This document shows, one piece after another, positions 24,040 through 56,800 of a stretch of DNA of 64,000 bases; the stretch's first letter is position 1, and every line of letters starts with the position of its first letter. The position numbers and the translations under genes were made by a program. The notes beneath the pieces were generated by a model, which did no database searches, had not been told where the DNA came from, and worked only from the letters and a program-made list of their open reading frames with translations. This DNA is from Magallana gigas. Taxonomy: Eukaryota. The stretch is taken from assembly GCF_963853765.1 (NCBI RefSeq), contig NC_088860.1:20770001-20834000 (forward strand), read 5' to 3'.

Positions 24040-24183
24040 NNNNNNNNNNNNNNNNNNNNNNNNNNNNNNNNNNNNNNNNNNNNNNNNNNNNNNNNNNNNN
24101 NNNNNNNNNNNNNNNNNNNNNNNNNNNNNNNNNNNNNNNNNNNNNNNNNNNNNNNNNNNNNNNNNNNNNNNNNNNNNNNNNNN
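24040..24183. other. Assembly gap covering the end of exon 2 and intron 2 of copy A
   Basis: Directly visible. Confidence 1.
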
Positions 24184-25220: not shown

Positions 25221-27855
25221 TTAAATGAATATACTAAGTTTTCTACGACAGGTGTCAACTACTTACCTGGAAAAAACAATTCTTATTTCATATTTCGAAA
25301 AATGCGTTGAAAAATTCCCTTTATGAAAATAAATTTAGATGAATACATTAAAATTCTAAAACAACAATACTGTTTTGAAATATACTTTTTCCGTTTCCAA
25401 ACATGGAGTATTTAGTGTTTCACGTCTTTTTCACGTTCACGGAAGCTCCAAGGAAGTTTGGTGGCAGCAGGGGCAATTCAGTTTTTGATTGGAGCAACAG
25501 GATTAGTCAGCCTCCTTCTGAAATTCATTGGACCAATCACAATCGTTCCAACACTTCTTCTGATTACCGTTTTTCTCGTCAGAGCATGTGTTAAATTTGC
25601 TTCCGTTAATTGGGGCATAGCGTTAATGTGAGTTGAAACAATTAAATAATTTTATATAATTTCATACAATCAGATTGCTATTTTGGAAGTCACTGACTAC
25701 TGTTATGTTATTGAAGGGTAGCAGCAGTATCACTGATACTGTCACTATATCTCAGTTATTACAATACACCTATTCCGATGTGGACGAAGAAGAAAGGTTT
25801 TCATATCCTGTGGTTTCCATTACATCAAGTGTATTCGGTATGTTTTTAAAGATTATACCGCCAACAGCATTTATAATTTCTGATAATATTTTTAGGAAAG
25901 GATTTCTATCTAGCAAATTTAAATTTATTGTATTGTCGAGCCTTAGCCAGAAAATGATAAACAGTAACAGCACTTCATACTTCAAATCAGCATGTCATCT
26001 CGTACTTAGTATTGCGATGCAATGTCGAAATCATACTTGTATATGTATATGTAGGGTATTCAAGTCGCGTAGAACACAGGATGAACCAGTATTCAAAAAT
26101 AAAGTTAAAACCTTACTTTCAACAATAAAATCAGATTTATGAAATGTGATTTTAGCCGCAAGGTACATGTAAATAATCAAAATATTAAAACCAAACATCA
26201 CATTGTGTATTTCACGTAAAGCAATGCTCCTATACCTATTCCTGGGTTTTTAGATCCTTATTGGGATTCTAGTTGGTTGGTTTGTGTGTGGTGTAATGAC
26301 AGTGGCAGGTGCGTTTAGTCCTGATGACAAGTTGGCGAGAACAGACACTGGCTTGGACGCCATTAGAAAAGCTGATTGGTTCCGGCTACCATACCCAGGT
26401 ATTTCTGCTAATCAACTACTCAATTATTTGACAACATGCCGCCCTGATCATGATTCACATATAATGAGAAATAATGACATTGTATACATTGAATTTGATT
26501 ATCAACTGCTAAACTGAATTTTTACGAACTTTTCAGATCAGTTCGGTTCGATTTCGTTCAGTGCGAGCATTTTTATGGGATTTTTTATAGGAACTATTAT
26601 GTCTATACTCGATTCTATTGGGGACTACTACGCATGCGCCAAAATATGCAATCTTCCTCCTCCACCAGCACATTGTGTAAATCGAGGGATAGCCATTGAG
26701 GGATTTTGTAGCCTTATCGCGGGCTTCCTTGGTTGTGGACATGCTACGACAACTTATGGCGCAAACATTGGTGCAATTGGCGTGACAAAGGTTAAAAATC
26801 ATTGCATCGTATATGAATATATTTGGTCAAAGATGTTTCATTCTTAACCAGCCCATTTTATGTCCTCGCAATAAATGATTTGCTTCCGAGTAAGTAGTTT
26901 TTTAGCTGTATTTAAGAAAATACGCACATTATTTATCAAAAATTTATCTAATACGACTTTTCAGGCTTTTCCAACAATCCGAGATATAGACGGAAAACCC
27001 TATAATAATCCTGTTATGTAATATTCAATACGCAAGTACTGGTTCTATCTTTAGATTAAATTGTCTGCTCTTAATTGGTTCCAAACGCTACCACTGTAGA
27101 AATGGCGCTTTTGTAATCGTAATCAATGACAGCGAAACCAGTCCTATTGAGCTCTTGCGTAGGAATATTTACGACTACAAAATATATAAATTGTTCGTAC
27201 TTTTCAAAATATAGCTATTTTCAAGGTATTTATAAATAAGTTTCTCTAAAAAAAAATTCCTCTGATTACTTAACATCGAATTCATCGAGTAATTTCAAGC
27301 GCTTAGTCTTGTTAGTGGTGATGATTTGTCCAAACACTCTTTTACTTCCGTAACTGCATAGAAGAATTTATGAAAATCAAATGCAAGAATTTTTTTTCAG
27401 ACATGTTGAAATTTATATTCTAATTCATGGTAAAATAACAAATGTGATTAAATACAACAGCTGCATTGAAAGCAAAACTTAATTTTCACTTAATTCTCTT
27501 TTAATTCCAAGGTTGTAGCCAAGAATATGAAGGCATGGGAAGCACTGTTATTATTTTCTGAAGTACACAATTTATACACTTTCTTCATGGAAAAAAGACA
27601 TGATAATAATTATTTGATACGTATATATGTTTAGGATCAGTAACCAGTGACGGCGTGATCAAAATGCTACTTGTTTACCCCAACCTGTGCGCGGGTGTTG
27701 TTGCCTGCTTTCTGGACAATACAGTCAAAGGTTGCTTTTTTCAATCTCTCATATTTCATAGATATTGCATTTATTGAATGGTAGCTGTTTACGAGGGTAT
27801 TTTTATTTTTTAAATTTTCTATTCTATATCTAAATGAGAATATATTTGATCTTAA

Positions 27856-28284
27856 AGGGGCATGGTCACGATTTTGGTCAAATTCTATTTTCCTTTTTTT
27901 ATTATTTACAATGCATTTCTAATGATAAAATGAGATTTCATGTAGACAAGGCTCGTGCCCAGTTTTTGATTACATTGGTACAATATACCAGTAAAACATC
28001 TTTTTCAACCTGATTTGTCTATCTTTATATTAATTTTAAGCATGATTAAACAGTTCCTTATGTTTAACACATTTATTTTAGGTCTGACATTAGAATTTTC
28101 ACTTCAAAATTCAAAATGTAAACAGACTTTGTTTAGATAGCAAAGAATTTCAAGCTGTGTAATTTTCTTAAAACTCAACGAATAAATCTCAAATTTTAGA
28201 TGCCTTTTAAGAATACCTTACTGAAGCATGGTAAAAATTAAAATCGGAAAAATTATTTTCGACCAAAATCGTGACCATGCCCCG
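27856..28284. mobile_element. Kolobok-like MITE in the last intron of copy A
   Basis: TTAA flanks and TIRs; present at the same position in copy B (35017-35485), so it predates the duplication. Confidence 0.88.
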
Positions 28285-30268
28285 TTAAGATAACAAAACA
28301 AAGTGACATTAGATATAAACAATGTATGTTTATATGTATGCATGTCAAAACTTCATAATGATAAATGAAATAAATATTGTAAGCTGGATTCACCAAAATT
28401 CAATACGCAAACAAAACTATGTTTAGGATTAAGAATACTAGTACTTTTTAAAAAAAAAAGTTTATTTAAAAAAGTATCTCTAACACGCAACAAAACTCTA
28501 TTTATGTTTTTAACAACGATTGTAATGCATTCTGTATGGCTATTAATTATGTTCCTCTTGAAACGGTAAGAGAAATTACTTAATTTGACCGTTTTTTTAT
28601 TGAACATTACCTCTATCTGAATGCATGGCAATTTCATGATTATTTGTTTATTTGTTTAAATTCAGGTACTTTGAAAGAAAGAGGAATTGAGGCATGGCAG
28701 GTAATGATCGACGACAAATCAGACAATATGAAAGAATTTGATGGTGACGTCACGATCTATGACATCCCTCTCCCACGATATCTAAAGAAATCCAATGTCT
28801 TCCGGCGTTTACCATTTATTCCTCCTGTTCGTGAATAATTGCCATGTCATTTTTCTATTGTTTTTATCCACAACGTTTATTATTGTTATAAGTGAAATAG
28901 TATAAATGCGTTTAGGCTTTACTATTATAATTTATTTACACATATATTGCTATTTTAACAAAAAGAAATGATTTATATAATAGATAGATCATAAAGTTTT
29001 AGAAAAATAACTTGTTCAAGTTTTACATGCTTATATGCGGAAAACTAAAAATTAGTTTATTCTAATTAATAAATGGTTGTTTAAACTCTAAAGATGCTGA
29101 TTGCCATGACTTCAAGCCTAATGAGCGTGTACCTGAAATAAAAGAGTGCTTGTCAGATATTTCATGTATATAATTATATCCATGTAGAACTCCCACACAC
29201 AAAAAAAAACAAATATTAAAAAAATCATAGTAATAAAATCATACATCCATACTCAGGAGACAGTAACTGTCACACATATTGATTTGTCCTTTTACAAACT
29301 TACTTTTTCACAAATATATTACGAAATACTTATTTACATCTAACAAGCTGAAACGTGATTCTAATTAATTTGTTTTATGCTTTTCAAATCAGACAATACT
29401 AAAAAGTAAAGATAGTTAAAGTATTATATAATATAGTACTTAACAATCGATAAATTCGATGCAATGTTTTGAAAAGCATTTTTTAAATAGAAATATTCAA
29501 ATTCGATATGATATATGTACAAACAATTCATACAGTTGGTACATGTAAATGTAAATACCCATAAATGATTGCTTGAACCAGAAATTATTCTTTCCTGAAT
29601 AAAAATCAACTCTCGTCAGTTCTTTAAGAACTTTGATTTGTGATGCTTTAACTGGGTTGGAAAATATGATGAAACAGCTCACAAAGGCGAGCAGTACAGG
29701 CCTCACAGCAAGCTATCTACATTTACAACGAAAACAAATATTCTGATAGACTAAGAATATTCAATATCTTTTCAATAACTGTATGATTTAAAATCAAAAT
29801 TTCTGCAAAAACCACCTTATCATATTGCTTATTCAGTATGTCCAATTTTCAATCTTAGAAATATTTTTGACATTGCATTTATATATTTACGTGGATTCTC
29901 TAATAACAGAACAGTGTTACTAAATAAAACCAAAAATTGGAGTTAGGGCTTAAGTTTCATTATTTTTGTATGATAATTTAGATGCTTATTATTGGTTTCT
30001 AACCCTATAGGCCTAAAATACCTTTCTAAAGAGCACAAAATATGATGCAATTTTACCACGTGAACGTGGGTATACATATAGATAGACTACAGGTATATGT
30101 AGCCCAACGTTTCTGTAACCGATCTACATTCATGCCTATGCATTAAACATGGAGAAGCTCATACGTCTTCCATATCAGGCCGACTTTTAAAAGACACATT
30201 CATCCATCATTATTGAATGTATCATCGAAGAGAAATCAAGATATAGATTTTTGTGAATTGAAAAGAAA

Positions 30269-31522
30269 ATGGGTACCGCAGAAGAAAATGGGCTTGAAGC
30301 AAAATATGAGCGAGACAATTACGTTGAAAAAGGAACTGGGTTTGAAACGGGGAAAATGATTAAAGATGAAGAAAAGAATAATCTGGTTGTTGAGATTGAA
30401 ACAGATCCGAAGCAGCATATCTTGTATAAGGCAGGGGATCACCCACCGATTTATCTAACCATTTTCTGTGGTTTTCAGGTAATATATCTTTTTTTTAGTC
30501 CACCGGAATCTGTATCATTTAGTCATTGTATATTGTAAAGAAAACTAGGATTAAATGCACCGATGCATAGTAACAGAGTTTGCAATGCTGTAGAAGCAGA
30601 AATATTCGTTGAGAATTATTTTCGTTATCACCATAAATCAACGAAACTAAATCCATGACGAATTTTTAATCAAAATATTAATGAATACAAAGAAATTACG
30701 ATATGGCGAAACTAAATGCCAACGGAATTTTATTTGGTACAAAAACAACGAAGTTTTGACCCAACGAAAATATGTGCTTCTACAGTATGTAACTAGCCGT
30801 AAGTAAGGTCAAGTAATAATTACGACACATTCCATTCTGACGGTTAACACTGAAGAAAATGGGTGAATAAGGCGTGTATAATGCCTACATAAGGACAGAT
30901 AAGATACTGTAAAATTATCAACAAATCTGATAATCGCTTTTTAAAGCTATTAATTACAATGTATATTTAACATTATATCTATTAGTAATCTTTAAATATG
31001 TTAAATACTTGGAATATGTTGATTTAAACCAGAGTATGCGTGTTAAAACTTCCATCTAGTGTCATTTTTAAGAACTTCACTGCGTTTTCTTTTATAGTTA
31101 GGGTCGGTCCAAGCTCCATATATCTTGCTTGTAACTCAATATTCACTCTCAAACTTTGACATAGTATTATAAATACCCATATTAACCATATTAGACAATA
31201 TAAATGGAAAAATAAAATATGAAATTTAAGCTCAAATTTTGTCCAGGTCCCTTTAAGCAAAATTGTAAGATAACCTCTGAAAAGACGATCAATGTAAAAC
31301 AAAAGATCTTTTCAACTATTATCTTGTAAAATACTCTGTAAAGATTTTTATTTTGTCCCACAGCACACTTTAGTCTCGCTTTCTAATGTGATGGCAGTTT
31401 CTCTTTTGGTATCCGACGTCACCTGTGCAAATCTGGATGACGACATCAAGTCCACCCTTCTTAGCTCTACAATGTTGATGTCTGGTGTCTGTACAGTTAT
31501 GATGTGTCTGTTAGGTTCCAGG

Positions 31523-31582
<60 letters not shown>

Positions 31583-34500
31583 TGTATCTCACAACGTGTG
31601 ATTACATGTAGAATCAGTATTTACTATCATTTCATTATTCTTCCGTAGACTTCCTTTGTTCCAAGGCGCTGCTTCAGAATTTTTGATTCCTTTGCTTGCA
31701 ATGCAGGTTTTAGATAAATCAAAGTGTGATTTTCCAGCAAAAATTTATATAGGTATGAATATACTTTTAATCACCAAAAAAACATTTTCTGGAAGTGTAC
31801 ACTCGTGTTGTCGTTTTTTTGTTGGGGTTTTTTTTTTGGGGGGGGGGGGGGGTTGTTTGGTTTTTATTTGTTGTGGTATTTTTTTTTTGTTTTGTTTTCT
31901 TTTTTCAAAATTGTATTTTGACAGAGCAGTTTTATCTCGGAGTAAGTATTTTAGACAAATATTTATTACAAGTAAATTTTATCTCCTTTTATTCGGTGTA
32001 TCATTTTAGACACAAACTCTACGATAACAAACACGTCTGGTATACATCTTGATCAACATAGCGAGTTTATACTGAAGAATATTCGAGAGGTGAGCATCTT
32101 TCATTTGTTTATGTACATATATCAAGATTTAAGCAGATAAACGTTACAAACTGTAAAAATAATTAAATTTAAATGAATGTTTTGCTTGATGGGTGTCTAC
32201 TATTTACCTAGAAAAGAATTCTTATTTCATATTTCGAACATAGAAGAATTTCCCCTATTTAAGAAAAAATTGATGAATACATTAAAATGACAATACTGTT
32301 TTGTAGTAATATGGAGTATTTAGTGTTTCACGTCTATTTCACGTTCACGGAAGCTCCAAGGAAGTTTGGTGGCAGCAGGGACTATCCAATTTTTGATTGG
32401 AGCAACAGGATTAGTCAGCCTCCTTCTGAAATTCATCGGACCAATCACAATCGTTCCAACACTTCTTCTGATTACCGTTTTTCTCGTCAGAGCATGTGTT
32501 AAATTTGCTTCCGTTAATTGGGGCATAGCGTTAATGTGAGTTGAAACAATTAAATAATTTTATTTAATTTCATACAATCAGATGGCTATTTTGGAAGTCA
32601 CTGACTACTTTTATGTTGTTGAAGGGTAGCAGCAGTATCACTGATACTGTCGCTCTATCTAAGCCATCACAACACCCCAATTCCAATGTGGACGAGAAAG
32701 AGAGGTTTTCATATCCTGTGGTTTCCATTACACCAAGTATATTCGGTAGGTTTTCATAGATATACGGCCAATTGCATGCATGATTCATTCTAATATTTTT
32801 AGAAAAAGGTTTCTATCTAGCAAATTTAAATTTATTGTATTGTCGAGCCTTAGCCAGAAAATGATTAACAGTAACAGCAATTCATACTTCAAATCAGCAT
32901 GTCATCTCGTACTTAGTATTGCGATGCAATGTCGAAATCATACTTACATGTATATGTAAGGGTATTCAAGTCGCGTCGAACACAGGATAAACCAGTATTC
33001 AAAAATAAAGTTAAAACCTTTCTTTCAAAAATGAAATCAGATTTAAGAAATGAGATTTTAGCTGCAAGGTACATGTAAATAATCAAAATATTAAAACCAA
33101 ACATCACATTGTGTATTTCACGTAAAGCAATGTTCCTATACCTATTCCTGGGTTTTTAGATCCTTATTGGGATTCTAGTTGGTTGGTTTGTGTGTGGTGT
33201 AATGACAGTGGCAGGTACGTTTAGTCCTGATGACAAGTTGGCGAGAACAGACACTGGCTTGGACGCCATTAGAAAAGCTGATTGGTTCCGGCTACCATAC
33301 CCAGGTATTTCTGCTAATCAACTACTCAATTATTTGACAACATGCCCTGATCACATTTAATGAGAAATAATGACATTGTATACATTGAATTTGATTTTCA
33401 ACTGCTAAATTGAATTTTACGAACTTTTCAGGTCAGTTCGGTTCCATTTCGTTCAGTGCGAGCATTTTTATGGGATTTTTTATAGGAACTATTATGTCTA
33501 TTCTCGATTCTATTGGGGACTACTACGCATGCGCCAAAATATGCAATCTTCCTCCTCCACCAGCACATTGTGTAAATCGAGGGATAGCCATTGAGGGATT
33601 TTGTAGCCTTATCGCGGGCTTCCTTGGTTGTGGACATGCTACGACAACGTATGGAGGAAACATTGGTGCAATTGGCGTGACAAAGGTTAAAAATCATTGC
33701 ATCGTATATTAATATATTTGGTCAACGATGTTTCATTCTTAACCAGCCCATGTTATGTCCTCGCAATAAATGATTTGCTTTCGTCATTACATTAATTATT
33801 TTACAATAAGACTTTGTTATAAAAGTGTATTTTGTCGATAATTATTCATTGACAACATTAAAATTATCTTGTCTTTGCATAATTGCTTTTCCATCTTCTT
33901 TCTAAAATTATCCTGTTTTCATAATTTGCTTTTTCATCTTCTACGTAGGTAGCCAGTAGAGATGTGTTTATCGCTACTGGTGTGATATATTTCATATTCG
34001 GTATCATTGGGAAGATTTCAGCCGTTTTCCTTACCATTCCTTATCCAGTCTTAGGCGGAGCGCTCATTGTGATGTTTGGAATGTTCAACGGTGTCGTTCT
34101 ATCGAACTTGCAAGTTGTCTCCCTTAGCTCAACCAGAAATCTTGCCATTATGGGAACAGCTATCTTGTTTGGTTTCATGATTCCGTATTGGTTGGAGACA
34201 AATCCTGATGCTATTCAAACAGGTGTCATGTTTTCAAAGTATTAAAATCAAATGAGAGAAGACAACAGCAATAGAAACACATTTTCTAAGTACTGACTGG
34301 GTTTGGTTTTATTGATTATTATTAATTTTGAAACCAACGATATGTAAATTCGCATGGCAAGTAGTTTCTTAGCTGTGTTTGAGAAAATACGCACATTGTT
34401 TATCAAAAATTTATCTAATACGACTTGTCAGGCAAATCCAAGCTATAGACGGAAAACCCTATATTAATCATGTTATGTAATATTCAATACGCAAGTATTT

Positions 34501-36032
34501 TTTCTATCTTTAGATTAAATTGTCTGCTCTTAATTGGTTCCAAACGCTACCACTGTAGAAATGGCGCTTTTGTAATTAATGACAGTGAAACCAGTCCTAT
34601 TGAGCTCTTGTGTAGGAATATACGACTACAAAATATATAAATTGTTCCTACTTTTCAAAATATAACTATTTTCAAGGTATTTATAAATAAGGTTCTCTGA
34701 AAAAAAAATCCTCTGATTACTTAACATCGAATTCATCGAGTATTTTCATGAAAAAAAGACATGATAATAATTATTTGATACGTATATATGTTTAGGATCA
34801 GTAACCAGTGATGGCGTGATCAAAATGCTGCTTGTTAACCCCAACCTGTGCGCGGGTGTTGTTGCCTGCTTTCTGGACAATACAGTCAAAGGTTGCTTTT
34901 TTTAATCTCTCATATTTCATAGATATTGCATTTATTGAATGATAGCTGTTTACGAGGGTATTTTTATTTTTTTAATTTTCTATTCTATATCTAAATGAGA
35001 ATATATTTGATCTTAAAGGGGCATGGTCAAATTCTATTTTTCTTTTTTTATTAATTACAATGCATTTCTAATGATAAAATGAAATGTCAGAGTTAATCGC
35101 AGAGTTATAAGCAAGATACAGGGCTCTCAATTCTTTTCATGTAAACAAGGCTCGTGCCCAGTTTTTGATTACATTGGTTCAATATACCAGTAAAAAATCT
35201 TTTTCAACCTGATTTGTCTATCTTTATATTAATTTTAAGCATAATTAAACAGTTGCTTATGTTTAACACATTTATTTTAGGTCTGAAATTAGAATTTTCA
35301 CTTCAAAATTCAAAATGTAAACAGACGGTTTGTTTACATAGCAAAGAATTTCAAGCTGTGTAATTTGCTTATAACTCAACGAAAAACACTCAAATTTTGG
35401 TTGCCTATTAAGAATGCCTTACTGAAGCATGGTAAAAATTAAAATAGGAAAAATTATTTTTGACCAAAATCGTGACCATGCCTCGTTAAGATAACAAAAC
35501 AAAGTGACATTAGATATAAACAATGTATGTTTATATGTATGCATGTCAAAACTTCATAATGATAAATGAAATAAAGCTGGATTCATTAAAATTCAAAACG
35601 CAAACAAAACTATATCTTAGGATTTAGAATACTTTTATTTTTTTAAAGTTTGTTATTTATAAAGGCATCTATAACACGCACCAAAACTCTTTTTATGTTT
35701 TTAAAAACGATTGTAATGCATTTTGTATGGCTAATAATTATGTTTCTCTTGAAACGGTAAGAGAAATTACTTAATTTGACCGATTTTTTTTTATTGAACA
35801 TTACCTCTATCTGAATGCATGGCAATTCCATGATTATTTGTATATTTGTTTAAATGCAGGTACTTTGAAAGAAAGAGGAATTGAGGCATGGCAGATAATG
35901 ATCGACGACAAAGCAGACAATATGAAAGAATTTGATGGTGACGTCACGATCTATGACATCCCTCTCCCACGATATCTAAAAAAATCCAAAGTCTTCCGGC
36001 GTTTACCATTTATTCCTCCTGTTCGTGAATAA
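30269..36032 (+). CDS. SLC23A: SLC23/NAT transporter copy B, intact, 598 aa
   Basis: Exons 30269-30478, 31364-31521, 31649-31752, 32010-32089, 32354-32535, 32625-32745, 33160-33304, 33432-33685, 33949-34222, 34796-34891, 35860-36032 sum to 1797 nt, in frame, all GT-AG. Motifs: TM1 FQH, RLPLFQG, DSIGDYYACA, NRGIAIEG, xNIGAIGVTKVASR, LGG..FGM, RNL..G, LDNTV. Confidence 0.93.
31527..31585. repeat. (CT)n(GT)n compound microsatellite in intron 2 of copy B
   Basis: Directly visible. Confidence 0.95.
35017..35485. mobile_element. Kolobok-like MITE in the last intron of copy B
   Basis: TTAA flanks and TIRs (left TIR partly deleted); paralogous to 27856-28284. Confidence 0.85.
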
Positions 36033-36175
36033 TTGCCATGTAATTTTTCTATTGTTTTCATTCGATGAATTATCGAATTCAGGCATCGATAATTTCGATG
36101 CGATGTTTTGAACAAACAATTTATACAGTAGGTACATGTACATGTGTAAATACCCATAAATGCTTGCTTGAACCA

Positions 36176-37652: not shown

Positions 37653-38319
37653 ATGGGTACCGCAGAAGAAAATGGGCTTGAAGCAAAATATGAGCAAGAC
37701 AATTACGTTGAAAATGGAACCGGGTTTGAAACGAAGAAAATGATTAAAGATGAAGAAAAAAATAATCTGGTTGTTGAGATTGAAACAGATCCGAAGCAGC
37801 ATATCTTGTATAAGGCAGGGGATCACCCACCGATTTATCTAACCATTTTCTGTGGTTTTCAGGTAATATTTCTTTTTTTGGTCCACCGGTATCTGTATCA
37901 TTTAGTTATTGTATATTGTAAAGAAAACTAGGATTAAATGCACCGATGCATAGTAACAGAGTTTGCAATGCTGTAGAAGCAGAAATATTCGTTGAGAATT
38001 TTATTTCGTTATTTTCGTTAGCAGTATAATCAACGAAACTAAATCCATGACGAATTTTTAACCAAAGTATTAATTAATACAAAGAAATTACGATATGACG
38101 AAATTAAATGCCAACGGAATTTTATTTGTTACAAAAACAACGAAATTTTGACCCAACGAAAGTATGTGCTTCTACAGTATGTATCTAGCCGTAAGTAACG
38201 TCAAGTAATAATTACGACCTATTCCATACTGACGGTTAACACTAAAAAATCAAAGTACTGAAGTACTGAAAGCCGGGCTCTTTTGTTGTGTCTTTATGCA
38301 TATTGTGTAGTAAAGACTG

Positions 38320-38366
<47 letters not shown>

Positions 38367-44300: not shown

Positions 44301-46415
44301 TTTGTGGCGGAAGGTTTTCAAGAAGGAAATGAAAAGGTTTCATAAATCAATAGTTTTACTATTACTTTAGCTTCCTAATTTTCAGCGCAGACCAAACTTC
44401 TAGCTAGTTTGTGTATTATGATTTATTAATGTGATCATGAAAACATATTAAAACAATATTTTGATATTTCTATCGATATATTTTGGCATATTTAACTTAT
44501 ATTTCATAGAAGTTAAAAAAAAATTAACTCCAATTGTGTCCCAAAATTAGCTTATTTCATGCTATATCTCAATTTTTTTTAGATGTGACCCCTACTTGGT
44601 TTCTTTCAAATGAGACATTTAATGTATGTCTATTTGTATGCAAAGTTTTGGAAAGATGACATTACATTACATTTATTTTTTTTATTTGATTACTCCAAAA
44701 TTTTGTAACATCTGCTGTTGTGTTCACTATGTACTGGCCTATGAAGCCACCATTTAAGCAAGAATTTTTAAACTTTGACTGTAATTTTCTTTTATTGTCA
44801 CTACATGTGTTCAACTTCATTCTGTTTAAAATTCGTAACTAAATAATGTTCAAACTATAAATATTTGATTTATTTCTTTAAATTTTCAGGCTCAATTTCA
44901 AATTTTAGTTAAAAAATTTCAGGAAAACTATCTTTTCTGGTTGGGGCCCTATATTTCCAATAAATGGCATGTGATATGGGTCACAAATAAAATAAATGAA
45001 CATTTTAGGCCTCCATCTTTATATCCAAGTGGTTTTCGAATGATTGACACTTGACATTACTATTAAATGCTTTTTCATCTTCTTCGTAGGTAGCCAGTAG
45101 AGATGTGTTTATAACTACTGGTGTCATATATTTCATATTCGGTATCATTGGCAAGATCTCAGCCGTCTTCCTTACCATTCCTTATCCAGTATTAGGCGGA
45201 GCGCTCATTGTGATGTTTGGAATGTTCAACGGTGTCGTTCTGTCAAACCTACAAGTTGTTTCCCTTAGCTCAACCAGAAATCTCGCAATCATTGGAACCG
45301 CCATCTTGTTTGGTCTCATGATTCCATATTGGTTGGAGACCAATCCTGATGTTATTCAAACAGGTTTCTTTCCTTTTGAGAATAAACAAACAAATGCCAG
45401 TTCGACTAAATATGACTAAAATAGGATACAAAAGTACCCTTGAAAATGTATTTAATTTAGTTATCAAATCTCGTCTTGTTTTGGAGGCCTCCCAACTGCA
45501 ACAGGTTTGGCAAGAATAGAGGCACTGTTATACTACTAATATATTCGTGAAATACACAATTTATTCTTGAGATTCACATTCAATTTGACAATAATTTTAT
45601 GGAACCATTTTTTGTTAGGTTCAGCCGCAAGTGATGGCGTAATAAAAATGCTACTTGTTAATCCCAACCTGTGCGGAGGAGTTGTTGCCTGCTTTTTGGA
45701 CAATACAGTGAGAGGTAGACAAGTTTTTTTTTCATTTTTCTCTGTATTTCATATTTCAGACTTTGACAAATTTGCATCTATTGTTAAGCAGATGTTTGTG
45801 GATATGATGTTTAATTTTAAACATTTTTTTTCTTATTTTAATAGCGATTTTTTTAATCAATGCACTAAAGTTTACTAAATTGATACATGCACATCATTTT
45901 CGTTCGGGTTGTTCAATGTGAAATGATTCCATGAGATTCAATACTGAGACTTGTATCAGCGCTAAAACGTTATAACGGTATTTTGAATGAATATTGGCTG
46001 CAACATTCGTTTGAATTCAACTTTGAAAAAAGGCAAACAATGCTTTAAACTACCATAAGCATATTAATACATTGAAATTCATTCGTTATTAATTAGCAAT
46101 AAAACATGAAAACTTCATTTACGGTTTATAAAACACTGCTAAAATTGTTACTTTTTATGGTAATACAGTGTGTATTGTTTTGTTATGAATATAACATTTT
46201 AAGAATATTTATATTTTTTGTCATACAATGCCTCAAATTCAGGTACCTTAAAAGAAAGAGGAATCGAGGCATGGCAGAAAATGATCGACGACAAAGTAGA
46301 CGATATGGAAGAATTTGACGGTGACGTCACTATCTATGACATCCCTCTCCCACAATTTCTCAAAAGATCCAAACTATTCCGGCGTTTACCATTTATTCCT
46401 CCTGTACGTGATTGA
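37653..46415 (+). CDS. SLC23A: SLC23/NAT transporter copy C, apparently intact (end of exon 2 in gap)
   Basis: Exons 37653-37862, 40514-(gap at 40669), 40862-40965, 41174-41253, 41500-41681, 41797-41917, 42166-42310, 42450-42703, 45090-45363, 45619-45714, 46243-46415. Exon sizes equal those of copy B and no stops were seen. Confidence 0.9.
38249..38808 (-). mobile_element. HINE/pearl-like element with (CT)n microsatellite in intron 1 of copy C
   Basis: One end has hairpin AGCCAGGACTCTGC-TTTCA-GCAGAGCCTGGCT; the other has AGTACTGAAGTACT stem-loop plus subTIR AGCCGGGCTC. It sits in an A-run and is absent at the same site in copy B (~30850). Confidence 0.8.
39889..40383. mobile_element. MITE with AGGGACTTGGACACGA TIRs and TTAA TSD (Kolobok-like, second family)
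   Basis: TTAA|AGGGACTTGGACACGA ... TCGTGTCCAGGTCCCT|TTAA. Related right ends lie just upstream of exon 2 in A (~23780) and B (31252). Confidence 0.85.
40669..40835. other. Assembly gap covering the end of exon 2 and intron 2 of copy C
   Basis: Directly visible. Confidence 1.
42749..43791. mobile_element. 1,043-bp non-autonomous element with CAG TSD (PIF/Harbinger-like) in intron 8 of copy C
   Basis: CAG|GGGCTCGTAACATAAAG ... CTTTATGTTACGAGCCC|CAG: perfect 17-bp TIRs. CTTAAG/CTTAG motifs cluster near both ends and there is no long ORF. Confidence 0.88.
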
Positions 46416-47836: not shown

Positions 47837-50800
47837 ATGGGCTCTTCTGAAGGCGATGGATACAAATTAAAGTGTGAAAAAGACAATAACGTTCAACTTG
47901 CAGCTTTGTTTGAGATAGAAAATGGCGTTGAAGATGCTGAGAAAGGCGATCTCCTTGTTGAGGTTGAAACAGATCCAAAGCAACATATCTTGTACTCGGC
48001 CAGGGATCATCCACCAATTTATTTGACCATTTTCTTTGGGTTTCAGGTAAAAAAAAATTATGTTGGATAATTTTTGCAAAGAAATGAGTGATATCTTTTC
48101 TTTTTATATAAAATGGTTATTCTCAACAAAAATAATGTATAATAATTTATATCGTTTACTTATTGAAGCATACCATTTTCCGACCTGTGCAATATAAACC
48201 AAAATTTCGTTTTTAGCACACTCTGATCTCAATTTCCGGTGTGATGGCCGTCTCTTTATTGGTCTCTGACGTCACATGTGCAAATCTAGATGACGACATT
48301 AAGTCGACTCTTCTTAGTTCCTCTTTGCTGATGTCTGGTATCTGTACAATAATGATGAGTTTAATCGGCTCCAGGTAATTATATCGATACTTCAGTATAT
48401 TGTTTTTTTTACCCACTTCTTAATCTATATCCCTTCAATTGTAAAGCGGGTTTTATTATATTTTACAGACTACCTCTGTTTCAAGGAGCAGCTAGCGATT
48501 TTTTGGTTCCATTGCTTGCAATGCAGGCTTTGAATAAATCAAGGTGTAATCTATTACAGACTTCTGACACAGGTATAAACAAATACGTACATGATTTAAT
48601 AACATTTTTGCCTATTATATTTTTGTATTGTTCATCGTTATATGTGCTATAAGACGTATGTCTTTGGCAAAAAAGAAATTGACATAGTAAAAATAAAAAT
48701 TAATACAACTCAGGAGTGGTATATGTTTAAAGTATTTTTCAAAACTAGGATCTAGGAAGAAAGACGATTTAATTCACGAAAAAATTTAGCAGCTCTAACT
48801 TATCACAAAACGTTGTATGTATAACTTTTAATAATCAAGTCTCCCGGATATAAAGTCGATAATTGATGGGGAAACGGGGGTTACATGAGTCAATGGTATC
48901 TCAGATTATCTATACCTTAATTAGCGCCAGGGGCCAAACATTGTAAACTTTTGGTAAAAAGAGACCCGTAGGCCTTTAATCGTCAGATTTTTATAATATT
49001 CATAATGCACAAAACGCATACATACATAAATCCATACAGCCTTTTTCTACAAGTATACAATGCACAGGATATTAATGTAGATTTCCTAAATTAGAAAACA
49101 AATTTAATATTGCCAAGTAACAATTTTTGGTGTTACTTATTAAGTTTTCAAGATGGAGTTAAAATAGTATGATTACCCTAAGTAAAAGTACATGTTCCCT
49201 CCCAATAAAAAACCTCAACTTCTACATCATGGCCAGGTGACCATGATTTTTACAGTTGAACACCAGGCATTATGAACATAATAAAAATGTAGGACTTTTT
49301 CTCCCACCCTAGGGCCTGAAAACCCTGACTCGGGGAATGTGAATTTCACAATTTAGGTAGAAAATTTCATGGACATCATAACTTTGTNNNNNNNNNNNNN
49401 NNNNNNNNNNNNNNNNNNNNNNNNNNNNNNNNNNNNNNNNNNNNNNNNNNNNNNNNNNNNNNNNNNNNNNNNNNNNNNNNNNNNNNNNNNNNNNNNNNNN
49501 NNNNNNNNNNNNNNNNNNNNNNNNNNNNNNNNNNNNNNNNNNNCATATTTATTAACAACAGTTTAAACGTTATAAAGTGCCAAAATTTGCGTAAAAAAAT
49601 AATGGAATCGGAATTTTCTGGTCATATCCACCTCTGCACGTTGTGTCCTAAATACATAACAAATTTTACGGAATTCCGAAATGCGGTTTAATTAAAAGGA
49701 GTTTTGCTTACAAAAAACAGGACTGACTGACTGACTGACGGATGGACGGACGGACGGACCGGTCAAAAACATCATACCTCTCACAACTTGTTGTGTGGGG
49801 TATAACTAGGTCGGCAGTGATAGTTTGATACTTTCCATATTTTCTTTTTCTTCCTTTTGTCTACATTACATCGAACAACTTCAAACAAAAAAAAATCAAA
49901 GAAGTTGAAAATAAAACACCCACAAATCAACAGATACAAAAGAATCGAGAAAATAAATATCAATAATTAACTCAGAGAATTTTTTATACGAGGCAACCAC
50001 GCCTGACAACACGGTGAAAGTGTTTGACTAGATTTTTTATTATAGACGCAACATTTTATAAGCAATTTTATACCTGGCATATTTCTAATTAGGGAATAAA
50101 AGTTGTCATAACGGTTATCATGTTTTGATTCTTTTAGTAGTATATCAACTTAAATGTACCTTCCCCTCTACCCAACCTGTCCTCCGAAAAAGCAGCGTTG
50201 CCTCTTTTTTCATTTTAATACAGAATGAAGCGATTGCAATGATGGTCGTATTTGTAAATTCTTAATATTGAACTTGCGACACAGGCAATATTAATATTTC
50301 GAAAAGTGTATTACTAAATGTATAAAAAAAAAAAACAATTTCAGAATACTACAGGAAAAGTTGCGGCACAAACGCAGTGTTGAGGTTGTCGGGATTTACA
50401 ATGGAAAAAAACACAATAAATTAAAAAAAAAGAAATTGTAAGCACGTGCTTACAGTGCTTCAATGGAGCTATGCCACTGTAATGTATTTTACTTTGTGGC
50501 AATATTGGCTTACTACATGTATATGGCAATATTGGCCTCGCCCTAGGGCCTGAACCCCTGACTCGGGGAATATAAATTTCACAATTTAGGTAGAAGATTT
50601 CATGGACATCGTAACCTTGTATTTAGTTTTTCTCAAATATATATGCCATTATATGGGAATAAAGAAGAACATTTTTTTTAAAAGATCTAAAGTACTTTAC
50701 GATATGGTAATATTGGCCCCGCTCTAGGGCCTGAACCCCTATTTCAGGGACCGTGGAATTCACAATTTAGGTGGATGATTTCGTCGACATCCGAATTATG

Positions 50801-53800
50801 CATTTAATTTTTCTCAAATATATGTGGGAGTGGAGAAGAACATTTTCGAAGATTTAATACATGTTAATATATGGCCATGAATTTAACAATTTTGGGAGAG
50901 GGCTTCATTGGCATTATTACCATGCATTTAGTTTTTCCCAACATGCGTGGGAGCAGAGGAGAATATTTTTAAATTTCTTACTTTTTACCTTCTTACTTTT
51001 CCCTCTGAATTTATTATTGTTTGTAGATACAAACCAAACAACTTTTACTAATTCGTCCGGAATTTTAATTGTAAACCAGAGAGAGTTTATTCTTAGCAAC
51101 ATCCAAGAAGTGAGTAGTTATCAATGTAATGTTGATATATTTTATTACAAACATAACACAGTGACTGATAAATTTGACTAATGCATAAAAATTTTGAAAC
51201 AATGAACTTATCGAACTTTGTTAATTATTTTTCGATGATGTTCACAGTGTAAGAATTATTCTCTGTGTCATTAGAATAAGAGAATTAGAACTATATATAG
51301 ATAAATTAGATTCTTGATACACCTCTATATCACTATTTTCCATTCGAAGCTCCAAGGAAGTTTGGTGGCTGCAGGGACAATTCAGTTTTTGATTGGAGCC
51401 ACAGGATTAGTCAGCCTCCTTTTGAAATTCATTGGACCAATCACAATCGTTCCAACTCTATTCCTGAGCTGCGTTTTTCTCGTAAGAGCATGCGTTAAAT
51501 TTGCTTCCGTTAACTGGGGCATTTCATTCATGTAAGTAAAAAGTAACAAATTTGAAATCCTTGTAATTCATTTCATCAGTTAACAGTAAATTGTGCTTAA
51601 TTTATCATAGAGATAACTTATATTTAAGGTATCTTTGAAGGGTAGCAGCCGTGTCCCTGATACTGTCGCTCTATCTAAGCCATCACAACACCCCATTTCC
51701 GATGTGGACGAGAAAGAAAGGTTTTCATATCATGTGGTTTCCATTACATCAAGTGTATTCGGTTAGTTTTCTTTTTCATATTGACCTATGAAAAATAGTT
51801 TAAATTACAAGATAAATTTCAAGTACGTTGTTTGTCCAAGTACATAGTTGTTTTATTTGATTTTCCGAACTAGTCAGTCAAGCTACTTCTAAGGGCTTTT
51901 TCTGCAGTTAAGACTACATGTATGGTGTTAGATGTACACAATACAGTACAAATGATATGAAATGCATCTGAAACCTAGTATTAAATGAGCAAACAACCCT
52001 AAATTTCAATTCTGTTGGTTTGCTACAAAATTTGCGAGGACAGAATTTCTCACTTTTTGCAATAAATAGTGCGGAAAACTAAACAAAATTTGTGAGGTCA
52101 GAATTTTTCACCCTCTGCAATAAATGGTGCAGAAAACTAATTAGAATTTTATGTTAAAAATTATATACCTTCCCACGCTTTATTTATATAAATGGGTTGT
52201 GTAAATTTATTTTTAAAATGTGTTGTAGACCTGTTCGGGATTTATGAAGCATATACCGTCCCATTTACTCTTGAATGAAATGATAATATTAAACTTCTTT
52301 TTGGGAGTTGATTTTAATCAACTCTCCTATGCAGTTACTCTGACAAACCGAAAGTGAAAGTGTTTGGACCAAAGCACAAATCATCGCCGCTGACATGACT
52401 TAGTTCTTGAAAATAATTGATAAATTCGATATAATGTATGCTAAAGCGTTGTTTTTCAAGGAAACTTATTAACAAATACCTTGAAAATAGTCAGATTTTA
52501 AATGGTATGAACATTTAAGATATTGTTTGTAGTCGTATGTATTCTTACGCCAGAGTTTAATATAGTCTCGTTCAACTCGACGCTCGGCTGTCTACGTAAA
52601 TCTCCGACAAGCAGAGAGGCTTTCTTGCTTGTCGGAGATTAACGACGATAGCCGAGCGTTTGGTTGAATGAGAGTAGAGTTCAATATTGCTAGGTTCCAT
52701 AAATTTTCCAGAAATATTTCTATCAATGATACATAGTTTGGTTGAATTGATTCTATCTTGAAATATTACTTGACATGATTCATATGGTTTCTTTTCAACA
52801 TTCTTGCGTCGAAAAGTCCGAATATTCAAATTATAAAAATGTGCGTAATTCAAATACAGATTAAAAACTACCTGTACTTGTTATGCAAAATAATACCGGT
52901 ATATCATTGATTTAAAATAAATAAACATCGATAAAATCAACTCCCGTCAGTGCTTCGATACTTTGATTTATTAAGGCATTATATCATATAGAGAGTTCAT
53001 TTTTTGGGGTACCGTTTTAGTCATTGCAATTGGTCGTTTCAGAATAAATTTGAATGGAATTTTACTCAATAATTTCAAGCTAGCCTTCTATCCTTGAGTA
53101 TTGGCTGAAATGAACACAGGCTATGTACATGTATAAGGTCATTCATCAGTTGGCCTTTTTATATAAACTTTTTACCTATTTTCTTCAGTAGTATGTCTTT
53201 GATCATTTGGTTCAATATGTTTATTCAAGAGTGTAATTGTTTAGCCAGTTAGATAAAATATCTTTCGAAAATTCTTGAATTACTTGTTTCAAATCACCAG
53301 AAAAATTAAATACATATCCATGTGAGTATGCTATTTTTTCAGATCCTTATTGGGATCCTAGTTGGTTGGTTTGTGTGTGGTGTAATGACAGCAGCAGGTG
53401 CGTTTAGTCCTGGTGACAAGTTGGCGAGAACAGACACTGGCTTGGACGCCATTATAAAAGCTGATTGGTTCCGAATACCGTATCCAGGTACGCTAGTTGC
53501 AATGTTTGTTGATAGTAAATTAATTCTTACACTATTATTTTAGCTGACCTGAACTAAAAGTGTTCATGTGTGTGAGTGGTTTTTTTTAAACATGAAATTA
53601 AAAGAAGAATAAAGATATGATTTTATAAATTGATGTCTTATCAGATTAGTATGAACAATTTTCAAACTTCTTTGCTGAAAGTGTCAGAAATGGACAACAA
53701 TCATGTGACATTAAGTCAAACTTTACTTAAAACTTTATGGGATTTTTTTTATCTAAGTATGAGAAAAATGTGTTTAAACATAGACATGTTTTCAAGATCA

Positions 53801-56800
53801 TGTACCGATGATCTCACCATGCACCATATCATTAACTTCTTCTATGGATATTTTTTCTATGGGATTTGTTTAGGTCAGTTTGGTCCTATTTCGTTCAGCA
53901 CGAGCGTATTTGTGGGATTTTTGATAGGAACTGTTACCTCTATACTTGATTCTATTGGGGACTACTATGCATGCGCAAAGATGTGCAATCTTCCTCCCCC
54001 ACCAGCACATAGTGTTAATCGAGGGATAGCCATTGAGGGGTTCTGTAGTCTGATCGCGGGTTTCTTTGGATGTGGACATGCTACGACAACGTACGGAGGG
54101 AATGTAGGTGCAATTGGCGTAACAAAGGTAAAAATACAGTTTTATTAGAAAGTGAAATGAAGTCTGAGATTGAATTAATTTAAAGTTCTTTTCAGCCACT
54201 CTTTTCGTACAAGTCACTTTGTGCTTAAGGCTAACAGGAGTAAATACATTGACCCGCAAAAAGACTGTTATATACAATCTTTATAAACATGCATTTATTT
54301 AATAAACTTTTTATAGAACTTTCATTGAGTGTATTAACGAAAGATTTGTTAAAATGTGTATCCAATTACAATTTTAAAAATTGGTATTATTTCGTTTTCA
54401 ACATATCATTTTAATATGATGAACGTTCTGACAAATTTAACTTTTCATGTACATGTACCAGATAATGCTTATGTGTATATTAAAAGCGTATAAAAGAATA
54501 AACAAAAATCGCTATAAGTTTTTTTTTTTTAATATTTATTAACAAACTGTTAATAAAAACGAAATTTCCTACAGAAACAATCATCAAAATCAAAACTTTT
54601 TTTATAGTAAAAAATGAAAAAAAAAATCTGTATGATCTTTCCATGCAGGTATCCAGTAGAGACGTTTTTATAACAACGGGTGTGATATATTTTATATTCG
54701 GTATCATTGGGAAGATCTCGGCAGTTTTCCTTACCATTCCTTATCCCGTACTCGGTGGGGTACTTTTCGTGATGTATGGAATGTTCATCGGTGTTGTTCT
54801 GTCAAATCTACAAGTTGTTTCCCTTAGCTCATCTAGAAACCTTGCCATCATGGGAACCGCCATCTTGTTTGGTCTCATGATTCCGTATTGGCTGGAGACC
54901 AATCCCGATGCTATTCAAACAGGTTTTATTTATTGATAGTAATTAGACAACAACAATAAAAAATAACAAGACTGAAAATGGACCTTTATAAAAATTTATC
55001 ATACTTTTATTAAACTTATGATTAGTAATTGATTTCTTAATTATACTCCCTAGCCGTAGTGCATTTTGAGAAAAGTAGTAGGTTTATTTAAAAAATCGCA
55101 TTGTTAGGTTATCGCATGTTTAAAATAAGACTATGTCTGTGCTTGGTTCTTGTCTGGTTCTGGCCCCGGGGCCATAAAAGTAAGACGATCACACTTTTGT
55201 TATGTCTCACTCTTTCACTATATATTCCTTTTCTAAAAGTGAAACTGAGATCAAAACAGAGCTCGTCTAACTTATATGGCCATGGGGCCAGGAGACCTTG
55301 GACTTTGTGTCAATCTTGAGAGTTTGGCTACAATATGTATGTTTCGAAAATACGTAATGAATTTCTGTGATGCATGTTAATAATGATCATTGAGCATTCA
55401 ATTAATTGTAGGGTCAGCAACCACTGATGGTATGATCAAATTGCTATTGATCAATCCCAACTTGTGTGGGGGAGTTTCGGCCTGCTTTCTGGACAACACA
55501 GTTAGAGGTATGGTTATTTTTGCTACTTCGTTATCTCTATAAGGGTCATTTTCAAAATTTGTCCAAATTTATGTTATTCAAGAATTCTAGTAAATATTGT
55601 GATAAAATCACAAATTTTGTTAATCTAATGAATTAAACTACAATCTGAAGACGAGATAAATGATAAAGAATGATTAAAAATTGATTTAATAACTGAAAAA
55701 AAGAAATTAAACATGTGTTGGTGAGAGAAAATTGGTTGTGATTTCGCCAATACTATACATTCAACTGCTATTATTACTGCATTTAATTTAATATAGCTGT
55801 ATAAAAATACATTTGATGTTTAGTTTGTGTTTAAAACTGTCTAAAATTGTGATAGGTTGTATTTTTAAAAAATGGTAAAATATGATATTTTAAATGATAA
55901 TGTTTGTTATTTTCGCCGTGTCCTTGGAGTAACCAAGGCATATAAGTTGAGTGTAATAGTTATCTTTCCTTGTGGAACTCTTCAACACCAGCTTTCTTCT
56001 TAAGTTCCTGTTCCCGCCAAAGCACAAACAGGCACCAAAAACATGTGTGTCTCAACGCTAACAAAATATGTGGTTTGAGGTAAGTTTGATTGCATTAGTA
56101 ATTTATTTTGAAGTCAGAGTTACCATGCTACTGTGACAATTATTTATTATATCGTTTCTTTGATGTATTAAGCAAATTTGTAGCAAAATACATATCATCT
56201 GTGAACTTTGTTCTATCTCAACAAGTCAGCCATTTTATGTATGCTTCCCACTATTTATAGAATAATTCCCTGGTGTTACTGTCCATTGTGTTACTGCAGG
56301 AAAAGTTACTCAAAGGACACATTTGATTATTCCATGGACATATATAGAAAAATGTATTAAACAGAATACAATTATGAGTCATCTGTTTTTTTATTCCGTA
56401 TATTTTTTAATTGACTGATAACTGTGAATGTAAAAAATGCAAAATTAATTGAAAAAAGCTGTTCGCGATCTGCTATTACTATGTTTTCGATGTTTTGGTA
56501 ACACCAGGGACATACATGTAATTAGTAACTCCAATGACAAATTAAAACAAACTTCAAATTTATCAATTCGAAATAAAACCCATTATGTCAAGTTTATTGC
56601 AAACTAATAATGCGGAATAATGTGCATTGTTGAGTGTTGCTTATTTTCAATTTTTATGTTTATGAATTTTACAAATTGATTAAATAAACAATATAAGTAA
56701 CACAAAGGACAAGTTTAGTAACTCTTATGACATTAACACGATGAAACATTTAGATTTTAGAGTATACTCATCTTTTTTTTATATTGCTGTAAAACATAAA

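What the first reader, a model, noticed from the sequence alone, without database searches (positions are those of the whole stretch)
26740..54130. All four tandem NAT transporters replace the specificity residue of the NAT signature with Gly or Ala
Seen: TTTYGANIGAIGVTK (A), TTTYGGNIGAIGVTKVASR (B, C), TTTYGGNVGAIGVTKVSSR (D). Established: the NAT motif is [Q/E/P]-N-x-G-x4-T-[R/K/G], and its first residue tracks substrate class (Q xanthine/urate, E uracil or broader nucleobases, P ascorbate in SVCT1/2). Inference: an expanded clade with an uncharacterised substrate rather than a standard vitamin C or nucleobase carrier.
Basis: partly seen in the sequence, partly recalled or inferred. Interest (0 to 1): 0.7.

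Follow-up and report, generated by a model that had tools for sequence, protein, structure and literature searches.

The report
Oyster SLC23 transporters with rebuilt substrate pocket
Four tandem oyster genes of the vitamin C/nucleobase transporter family (three intact, one missing an exon) belong to a large mollusc-only branch in which every residue known to grip the substrate has changed, so what they carry is unknown and the database label "vitamin C transporter" is probably wrong.

Summary
Four paralogous SLC23/NAT genes lie head to tail on the + strand. Their TM10 signature reads TYG-G-N (B, C, D) or TYG-A-N (A), where SVCT1 has Pro and nucleobase carriers have Gln or Glu.

The genome is Magallana (Crassostrea) gigas. 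My 11-exon models of C and D match RefSeq "solute carrier family 23 member 2" proteins. B, C and D are intact and under purifying selection (dN/dS about 0.15), and B is spliced in RNA. Copy A, the only Ala copy, lacks exon 9 in this assembly and is probably a decaying duplicate.

The change goes well beyond one residue. These genes belong to a strongly supported clade whose named members are all molluscs. In that clade:
- the TM8 substrate/Na+ Glu is Asp (99%);
- TM10 Ser/Ala-3 is Gly (100%);
- the TM3 aromatic is small;
- a new Asp/Glu sits in TM3 (70%, and in no sequence outside the clade).

All four UapA binding-site positions are therefore altered. The oyster also keeps canonical E- and Q-type genes.

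Most likely these are working secondary-active transporters with a non-canonical, untested substrate. The tandem expansion is published; I found no paper describing the pocket remodelling. This is a new variant of a known kind, of moderate interest.

The parts
20519..28838 (+). Gene A. It has 10 of the 11 exons. Exon 9 (274 nt, TM11-13) is absent between 26791 and 27634, which shifts the frame. The last 13 nt of exon 2 lie in gap 24040-24183. It is probably a decaying duplicate.
   Evidence: tblastn and splice-junction solving. DNA alignment with B shows about 570 bp missing. RefSeq isoforms join A exons 1-8 to B exons 9-11. RNA laid on A exon 8 carries B's letters.
30269..36032 (+). Gene B. 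11 exons, all GT-AG, intact 598-aa ORF.
   Evidence: The exon 1-2, 2-3 and 3-4 joints are seen in RNA contigs and raw reads from three studies. dN/dS against C is 0.14.
37653..46415 (+). Gene C. 11 exons, 598 aa. The last 3 nt of exon 2 and intron 2 are hidden by gap 40669-40835, giving one X.
   Evidence: 99.8% identical to P0156, RefSeq SLC23 member 2 of Magallana gigas.
47837..62699 (+). Gene D. 11 exons, 599 aa, intact. Gap 49388-49543 lies in intron 3. The last intron (55508-62526) holds a large transposon.
   Evidence: 100% identical to P0161, RefSeq SLC23 member 2 of Magallana gigas.
26749..26790 (+). TM10 NAT signature of A (TTTYGANIGAIGVTK). The Ala codon GCA is at 26761-26763.
33644..33685 (+). 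TM10 NAT signature of B (TTTYGGNIGAIGVTK). The Gly codon GGA is at 33656-33658.
42662..42703 (+). TM10 NAT signature of C. The Gly codon GGA is at 42674-42676.
54086..54127 (+). TM10 NAT signature of D (TTTYGGNVGAIGVTK). The Gly codon GGG is at 54098-54100.
33506..33520 (+). TM8 motif D-S-I-G-D of B. Asp replaces the conserved substrate/Na+ Glu (SVCT1 E341, UapA E356). The same motif is at 26611-26625 (A), 42524-42538 (C) and 53948-53962 (D).
31662..31682 (+). TM3 loop and helix start Q-G-A-A-S-E-F of B. Ser replaces the substrate-contacting Phe (SVCT1 F119, UapA F155). The next residue is a clade-specific Glu or Asp. The same stretch is at 24237-24257 (A), 40875-40895 (C) and 48482-48502 (D).
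40669..40835 (.). Assembly gap at the exon 2/intron 2 boundary of C. The gap in A (24040-24183) lies at the homologous place. In B this place holds a (CT)n/(TG)n microsatellite (about 31519-31600).
   Evidence: repeat skipped at 31519-31596
49388..49543 (.). Assembly gap inside intron 3 of D. It has no effect on the coding sequence.

Best explanation
The window holds a tandem array of Pacific oyster SLC23/NAT genes from a mollusc-specific subfamily, which I call clade I. B, C and D encode complete 14-TM proteins with the SVCT1 fold. They most likely work as dimeric elevator-type, ion-coupled importers, like the rest of the family. The mechanism is inferred; the fold and the ion-site Asp are shown.

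Their substrate pocket has been rebuilt:
- the TM10 Gln/Glu/Pro is Gly;
- the residue before it is also Gly;
- the TM8 Glu is shortened to Asp;
- the TM3 Phe is Ser;
- a new Asp/Glu sits at the first turn of the TM3 half-helix, at the same offset from its beta-strand as the lost TM10 residue is from its own strand.

The aromatic Tyr at motif position 2, which stacks on the ring in nucleobase carriers, is kept. I therefore infer a planar, probably heterocyclic solute, bound differently from uracil, xanthine or urate, and not ascorbate. The exact substrate is unknown. Copy A lost exon 9 and is probably decaying.
For: Identity and integrity:
- Pfam PF00860 on single exons.
- E 1e-107 alignment to SVCT1 over 558 residues.
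- AlphaFold model with pLDDT 85 and pTM 0.85, with strand-helix breaks at 128-132 and 405-409.
- Foldseek TM-score 0.89 to SVCT1 and 0.75 to UapA/UraA.
- GT-AG models for C and D that equal RefSeq proteins.
- dN/dS of 0.14-0.17 among B, C and D.
- Spliced B RNA in three studies, with strandedness consistent with + strand RNA.

The clade:
- On an IQ-TREE of 63 representatives with the motif columns masked, clade I has 100/100 support.
- Every named member is a mollusc.

Pocket, from 136 clade I sequences compared with 224 others:
- E341 to D in 99%.
- S390 to G in 100%.
- Position 4 is G in 82% and A in 8%.
- F119 becomes A, S, G or P.
- A120 becomes D or E in 70% of clade I and in 0 of 224 others.
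- D345 is kept in 100%, and Tyr-2 in 79%.

From the literature:
- UapA binds xanthine through F155, E356, A407 and Q408, and even E356D or Q408E cripple transport (PMC3405029).
- SVCT1 Na1 is held by E341, D345 and S390. S389A and S390A abolish uptake (PMC10011568).

The oyster also keeps canonical genes: at least three E-type (SENIG) and one Q-type. Clade I is therefore an addition, not a replacement.
Against: - No transport data exist for any clade I protein.
- The new TM3 carboxylate could simply stand in for the lost TM10 Glu/Gln, leaving nucleobase or urate transport intact.
- SVCT1 P391A keeps normal Km and Vmax, so position 4 alone is weak evidence.
- The link between the TM3 acid and a small residue at position 4 rests on very few independent events. 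The independent-pairs test has no power.
- The tree has no plant or bacterial outgroup, so the direction E/Q to G comes only from the states in other phyla.
Confidence: 0.5

Rival explanations
1. These are still ordinary nucleobase or urate importers. The clade-specific Asp/Glu in TM3 replaces the hydrogen-bonding role of the TM10 Gln/Glu, Asp replaces Glu in TM8, and the substrate class is unchanged.
For: - Tyr at motif position 2, Asn-5, Gly-7, Thr-12 and Lys/Arg-13 are all kept.
- The TM3 acid occurs only where position 4 is G, A or D (95 sequences). It is absent from the clade I members that have E, P, N or S there.
- Orthogroups of oyster Slc23a2 are annotated as purine permease or uric acid transporter in PMC8590024, though only by homology.
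Against: - In UapA the conservative E356D and Q408E changes already cause dramatic loss of transport (PMC3405029). Here all four binding-site positions differ.
- The oyster keeps separate canonical E- and Q-type genes.
- Clade II and part of clade III also carry Gly without any TM3 acid.
Confidence: 0.28
2. They are ascorbate (vitamin C) transporters, as the database names SLC23A1/A2-like imply and as several mollusc papers assume.
For: - The best solved relatives are SVCT1 (35% identity).
- D345, tied to Na+ coupling, is kept.
- SVCT1 P391A retains near-normal kinetics (PMC10011568).
Against: - The Ser-Ser-Ser-Pro block that contacts ascorbate and Na1 reads Thr-Tyr-Gly-Gly here. S389A and S390A abolish SVCT1 uptake (PMC10011568).
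- Ascorbate specificity is reported to have arisen in the vertebrate SVCT1/2 lineage (PMC5972032).
- The window genes sit in a different, mollusc-only clade.
Confidence: 0.06
3. The copies are redundant or decaying duplicates, or have become sensors or receptors, and have no transport role.
For: - Copy A has lost an exon.
- The array carries transposon insertions, and bivalve gene families turn over fast.
- PMC8590024 reports that some oyster Slc23a2 copies are not expressed.
Against: - B, C and D are full-length with dN/dS of 0.14-0.17.
- B is expressed and correctly spliced.
- The pocket residues, although non-canonical, are 80-100% conserved across more than 130 clade I sequences from three mollusc classes.
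Confidence: 0.08

Closest known systems
SVCT1/SVCT2 (SLC23A1/A2), vertebrate Na+/ascorbate symporters (PDB 7ytw, 8jew)
   Same: - 14-TM 7+7 fold, with TM-score 0.89 and 35% identity.
- Q-H in TM1.
- Asp345 equivalent kept.
- N-x-G-x4-T-K core of the TM10 motif kept.
- PPPP-H-x-x-NRG loop kept.
- Similar C-terminal tail.
   Different: - The TM10 block Ser-Ser-Ser-Pro reads Thr-Tyr-Gly-Gly.
- TM8 Glu341 is Asp.
- TM3 Ser117 is Ala and Phe119 is Ser.
- There is an extra acid at the position of A120.
- The genes sit in a separate, mollusc-only clade.
rSNBT1 / SVCT4-type and canonical invertebrate NATs (T-S-Y-S-E/Q-N)
   Same: Tyr at motif position 2. Metazoan, and probably Na+-coupled. The oyster has its own members of this type (loci L008 and L021-L023).
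   Different: The canonical type has Glu in TM8, Ser at position 3, Glu/Gln at position 4 and Phe/His in TM3. Clade I has Asp, Gly, Gly and a small residue at these sites.
UapA (A. nidulans) and UraA/XanQ (E. coli), the structural and genetic prototypes
   Same: The fold (TM-score about 0.75), and the positions of the binding-site residues on TM3, TM8 and TM10.
   Different: All four UapA binding-site equivalents (F155, E356, A407, Q408) are replaced. Sequence identity is only about 18%.
SVCT3 (SLC23A3) and fungal UapD-like proteins, the orphan non-canonical NATs
   Same: NAT-fold proteins that fail one or more of the three diagnostic motifs and have no known substrate.
   Different: SVCT3 lacks the TM8 motif and has Pro at position 4. 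Clade I keeps a D-x-x-G-D version of TM8 and has Gly. Its taxonomic range is different, and it has expanded much more.
Tandem Slc23a2 expansion in Crassostrea ariakensis (PMC8590024)
   Same: Tandem oyster SLC23 arrays. In that species some copies respond to heat and salinity and lie in selected regions.
   Different: In the passages I read, that paper treats the genes as purine or urate carriers by annotation and does not mention the binding-site motifs. I did not test orthology with this array.

Membership tests
NAT/NCS2 superfamily (SLC23; Pfam PF00860 Xan_ur_permease) | Significant match to the family profile | tested here: met
   Single exons score 64-70 bits against a cut-off of 27. The full protein matches SVCT1 at E 1e-107.
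NAT/NCS2 superfamily (SLC23; Pfam PF00860 Xan_ur_permease) | 14-TM 7+7 inverted-repeat fold with strand-helix breaks in TM3 and TM10 | tested here: met
   The model has pLDDT 85, with strands at 128-130 and 405-407 followed by helices. TM-score is 0.89 to SVCT1 and 0.75 to UapA/UraA.
Canonical NAT in the sense of Kourkoulou et al. 2018 (all three motifs present) | TM1 Gln-His | tested here: met
   Q-H is present in A-D. Note that 73% of clade I has Q-Q.
Canonical NAT in the sense of Kourkoulou et al. 2018 (all three motifs present) | [quoted passage not shown] | tested here: not met
   The motif is D-S-I-G-D in all four copies. Asp is found in 99% of clade I, against Glu in 99-100% of the other clades.
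Canonical NAT in the sense of Kourkoulou et al. 2018 (all three motifs present) | TM10 [Q/E/P]-N-x-G-x4-T-[R/K/G] | tested here: not met
   The first residue is Gly (B, C, D) or Ala (A). The rest, N-x-G-x4-T-K, is intact.
Ascorbate transporters SVCT1/SVCT2 | Ser-Ser-Ser-Pro before Asn in TM10 | tested here: not met
   The sequence here is Thr-Tyr-Gly-Gly/Ala.
Ascorbate transporters SVCT1/SVCT2 | Na+-dependent ascorbate uptake | not testable with these tools
   This needs an uptake assay.
Nucleobase-type NATs (SVCT4/SNBT1, UapA, UraA) | Thr/Ser - Phe/Tyr - Ala/Ser - Gln/Glu before Asn, plus the TM3 Phe | tested here: not met
   Thr and Tyr are met. Ala/Ser is Gly, Gln/Glu is Gly/Ala, and the TM3 Phe is Ser.
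Mollusc SLC23 clade I (defined here) | Placement inside the 100/100 clade, with TM8 Asp, TM10 Gly-3 and His at the SVCT1 N384 position | tested here: met
   On the tree with motif columns masked, B, C and D nest inside the clade. Site table.

The most novel reading that the evidence does not exclude
Molluscs evolved a new substrate class for the NAT fold. They moved the substrate-binding carboxylate from the start of the TM10 half-helix to the matching position at the start of the TM3 half-helix. They also emptied the pocket (Gly-Gly in TM10, loss of the TM3 Phe, shorter TM8 acid). The resulting importers would take a larger or positively charged planar solute, for example guanidino- or amino-substituted purine-like compounds taken up from seawater or food. 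The radiation into dozens of paralogues would then reflect diversification over such substrates.
Probability: 0.15. Interest if true: 0.75.

Novelty: new variant of a known kind. Interest (0 to 1): 0.5.

Why it matters
The NAT field explains specificity through a handful of residues, and has asked whether living proteins with transitional signature motifs exist (PMC5972032). Molluscs turn out to hold well over a hundred such proteins. They are conserved, expressed and under selection, with every canonical substrate contact changed. That gives a natural test set for how this fold acquires new substrates.

There is also a practical point. Mollusc papers on shell formation, stress and toxin accumulation read these genes as vitamin C or purine carriers by name alone (PMC10295696, PMC8590024, PMC9324277). 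The binding-site evidence says that reading should not be assumed.

Tried and rejected
- Co-variation test. I asked whether the TM3 acid and the small position-4 residue co-vary independently of phylogeny. The independent-pairs test finds only 3-5 usable pairs and has no power, so the carboxylate-relocation idea stays a hypothesis.
- Literature search on motif strings. Searching papers for YGGNIG, GGNIGAIG and LDSIGDYY gave no hits. That is weak evidence of novelty, because only open-access text is searched.
- Expression of A. RNA was laid on A exons 7-11 and B exons 1-4. Reads on A's exon 8 carry B's letters at 26754, 26760 and 26762. Only 1-2 reads of one run keep A's letters. Expression of A is therefore not shown, and the depth on A is mostly cross-mapped B.
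- The A exon 8 to B exon 9 splice implied by RefSeq isoforms could not be tested. The two sites are 7.2 kb apart and the reads tool takes at most 6 kb.
- Pseudogene readings for B, C and D are rejected: the ORFs are intact, dN/dS is low, and B RNA is spliced.
- An assembly artefact for the motif is rejected: there are four copies, two of them identical to independent protein records.
- Pfam found nothing in the two long transposon ORFs.
- An earlier-findings search by words returned nothing.
- No complex prediction was run. No binding claim is made.
Full report
**1. The observation**

A six-frame scan finds the NAT TM10 signature four times, all on the + strand:
- A, 26749-26790: TTTYGANIGAIGVTK
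- B, 33644-33685: TTTYGGNIGAIGVTK
- C, 42662-42703: TTTYGGNIGAIGVTK
- D, 54086-54127: TTTYGGNVGAIGVTK

Each exon hits Pfam PF00860 at E about 1e-18 to 1e-19. Each aligns to human and mouse SVCT1 with the Gly under the Pro of S-S-S-P-N-I-G. The published motif is [Q/E/P]-N-x-G-x4-T-[R/K/G], and its first residue is treated as a specificity determinant (PMC5972032; bioRxiv 10.1101/287870).

**2. Gene models and the gaps**

I used mollusc homologues found with the motif exon, tblastn and a splice-junction solver. This gave four 11-exon, all GT-AG genes:

| Gene | Span | State |
|---|---|---|
| A | 20519-28838 | exon 9 missing |
| B | 30269-36032 | 598 aa, intact |
| C | 37653-46415 | 598 aa |
| D | 47837-62699 | 599 aa |

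- D is 100% identical, and C 99.8% identical (only the X differs), to proteins named "solute carrier family 23 member 2 [Magallana gigas]". This identifies the genome and validates the models.
- Gap 40669-40835 hides the last 3 nt of C exon 2 plus intron 2.
- Gap 49388-49543 is inside D intron 3.
- Gap 24040-24183 hides the last 13 nt of A exon 2.
- The gaps in A and C sit at the homologous spot. In B that spot is a CT/TG microsatellite.
- No gap touches the motif, and nothing was filled in.

**3. Copy A**

A lacks exon 9 (274 nt, TM11-13). Aligned with B, about 570 bp spanning the end of intron 8, exon 9 and the start of intron 9 are absent, with no N run at the site. Joining exon 8 to exon 10 shifts the frame.

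RefSeq isoforms P0207 and P0192 carry A's exons 1-8, including the Ala, followed by B's exons 9-11. These are read-through models, probably built on this same assembly, so they are not independent evidence.

RNA laid on A's exon 8 carries B's letters at the three diagnostic sites. Only 1-2 reads of one run keep A's letters. dN/dS of A against B is 0.24.

I read A as a recent duplicate that is probably decaying. Its use as an alternative 5' block of B is not excluded. Ala at this site also occurs in apparently intact scallop and pearl-oyster proteins.

**4. Function of B, C and D**

- Pairwise dN/dS is 0.14-0.17, with dS 0.39-0.63.
- B's exon 1-2, 2-3 and 3-4 joints appear in RNA contigs and raw poly-A reads from three studies. 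Mate orientation is consistent with + strand RNA.
- An AlphaFold model of D has pLDDT 85 and pTM 0.85.
- The model matches SVCT1 at TM-score 0.89, and UapA/UraA at about 0.75.

**5. The wider pattern**

In the oyster's own genome the motif exon finds at least 18 SLC23 loci:
- Nine have TM8 Asp with TM10 Gly or Ala. These are the four here, a fifth about 8 kb upstream on the other strand, and four elsewhere.
- Four have TM8 Glu with S-Y-S-G-N.
- One is a canonical Q-type.
- At least three are canonical E-type (S-E-N-I-G).

Across about 360 near-full-length homologues, every named protein with Gly or Ala at position 4 is a mollusc: bivalves, gastropods and octopuses. The sampled cnidarians, annelids, nemerteans, arthropods, echinoderms, a hemichordate, amphioxus and vertebrates have Glu or Gln. 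One brachiopod protein has Asn.

An IQ-TREE of 63 representatives, with the motif columns masked, gives three groups:
- Clade I: 100/100 support, named members all molluscs, TM8 Asp. It contains the window genes.
- Clade II: 100/98 support, named members all molluscs, TM8 Glu with G, S, T and other residues at position 4.
- Clade III: the canonical E/Q types of all phyla, plus a mollusc subclade.

The site changes between Gly and another residue at least 11 times on this tree. TM8 E/D changes twice.

**6. The pocket**

Sites were mapped onto mouse SVCT1 numbering and tallied by clade. In clade I:

| SVCT1 position | State in clade I |
|---|---|
| E341 | D in 99% |
| D345 | kept in 100% |
| S390 | G in 100% |
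| P391 (E/Q in canonical types) | G 82%, A 8% |
| S389 | Y 79% (the nucleobase-type aromatic) |
| N384 | H 97% |
| F119 | A, S, G or P |
| A120 | D/E in 70% |

The acid at the A120 position is seen in 95 of 136 clade I sequences and in 0 of 224 others. It occurs only together with G, A or D at position 4.

From the literature:
- UapA's xanthine site is F155, E356, A407 and Q408, and even E356D and Q408E cripple transport (PMC3405029).
- In SVCT1, E341, D345 and S390 hold Na1.
- S389A and S390A abolish uptake, whereas P391A keeps near-normal Km and Vmax (PMC10011568).

All four UapA-site equivalents are therefore changed here, and two of the three Na1 side-chain ligands are altered.

In the model, residue 133 lies three residues after the TM3 strand (128-130). 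Residue 410 lies three residues after the TM10 strand (405-407). The new acid thus sits at the inverted-repeat counterpart of the lost Glu/Gln. That correspondence is my inference from secondary structure only.

**7. Interpretation**

Shown:
- family membership and fold;
- intact, constrained and expressed genes;
- a large clade, mollusc-only among named members, with a conserved non-canonical pocket;
- canonical paralogues retained in the same genome.

Inferred:
- ion-coupled elevator transport;
- a substrate that is neither ascorbate nor a nucleobase bound in the canonical way;
- a planar, ring-like substrate, because Tyr-2 is kept.

The main rival is that the TM3 acid compensates and that nucleobase or urate transport persists. 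Ascorbate transport and loss of function are unlikely.

**8. Novelty**

Tandem SLC23 expansion in oysters and scallops is already published (PMC8590024; PMC9324277). Mollusc SLC23 genes are routinely called vitamin C transporters (PMC10295696). I found no paper that describes the Gly/Asp pocket, and no characterised NAT listed in PMC5972032 has it.

This is a new variant of a known kind: an orphan NAT subfamily comparable in status to SVCT3 or UapD-like proteins, but much larger. It bears directly on the open question of transitional NAT motifs.

Noticed in passing
window 26791-27634 (compare B 33686-34795): Gene A has lost about 570 bp, including the whole of exon 9. RefSeq isoforms (P0207, P0192) bridge from A exon 8 to B exon 9, which would make A and B one locus with alternative first halves.
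   Followed up: partly
window 55508-62526 (ORFs 57026-59092 and 58963-61155): The last intron of gene D is 7 kb long and holds a large transposon with two long ORFs. Another note on this window calls it Sola2-like. Neither ORF has a Pfam hit. D is still annotated as spliced across it.
   Followed up: partly
G000:C8:20762187-20762429, minus strand (locus L007), about 8 kb before the window start: A fifth clade I SLC23 gene (L-D-S-I-G-D-Y-Y and T-T-Y-G-G-N-I-G) lies next to the array in the opposite orientation.
   Followed up: partly
window 24040-24183, 40669-40835 and about 31519-31600: The assembly gaps in A and C fall at the same exon 2/intron 2 boundary. In B that boundary carries a CT/TG microsatellite, so the repeat probably caused both gaps.
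   Followed up: partly
window 27800-28200 (intron of A): RNA and contig depth is very high (word depth in the thousands), with many loose ends at 27850-27852, 27882-27891 and 28124. This looks like a high-copy, transcribed repeat.
   Followed up: no
G000 loci L011-L014 (C8:3.92-3.93 Mb; C5:0.34 Mb): A second oyster group keeps the TM8 Glu but also has Gly at position 4 (A-G-H-A-T-T-S-Y-S-G-N-I-G). Its full-length relatives fall in the mollusc subclade of clade III.
   Followed up: partly
window about 15648-15944 and 17361-17582, + strand: Open frames with a Pro/Ser-rich stretch and an SH2-like ending (…VAYYRKNELS…) suggest an unrelated adaptor-type gene upstream of the array.
   Followed up: no
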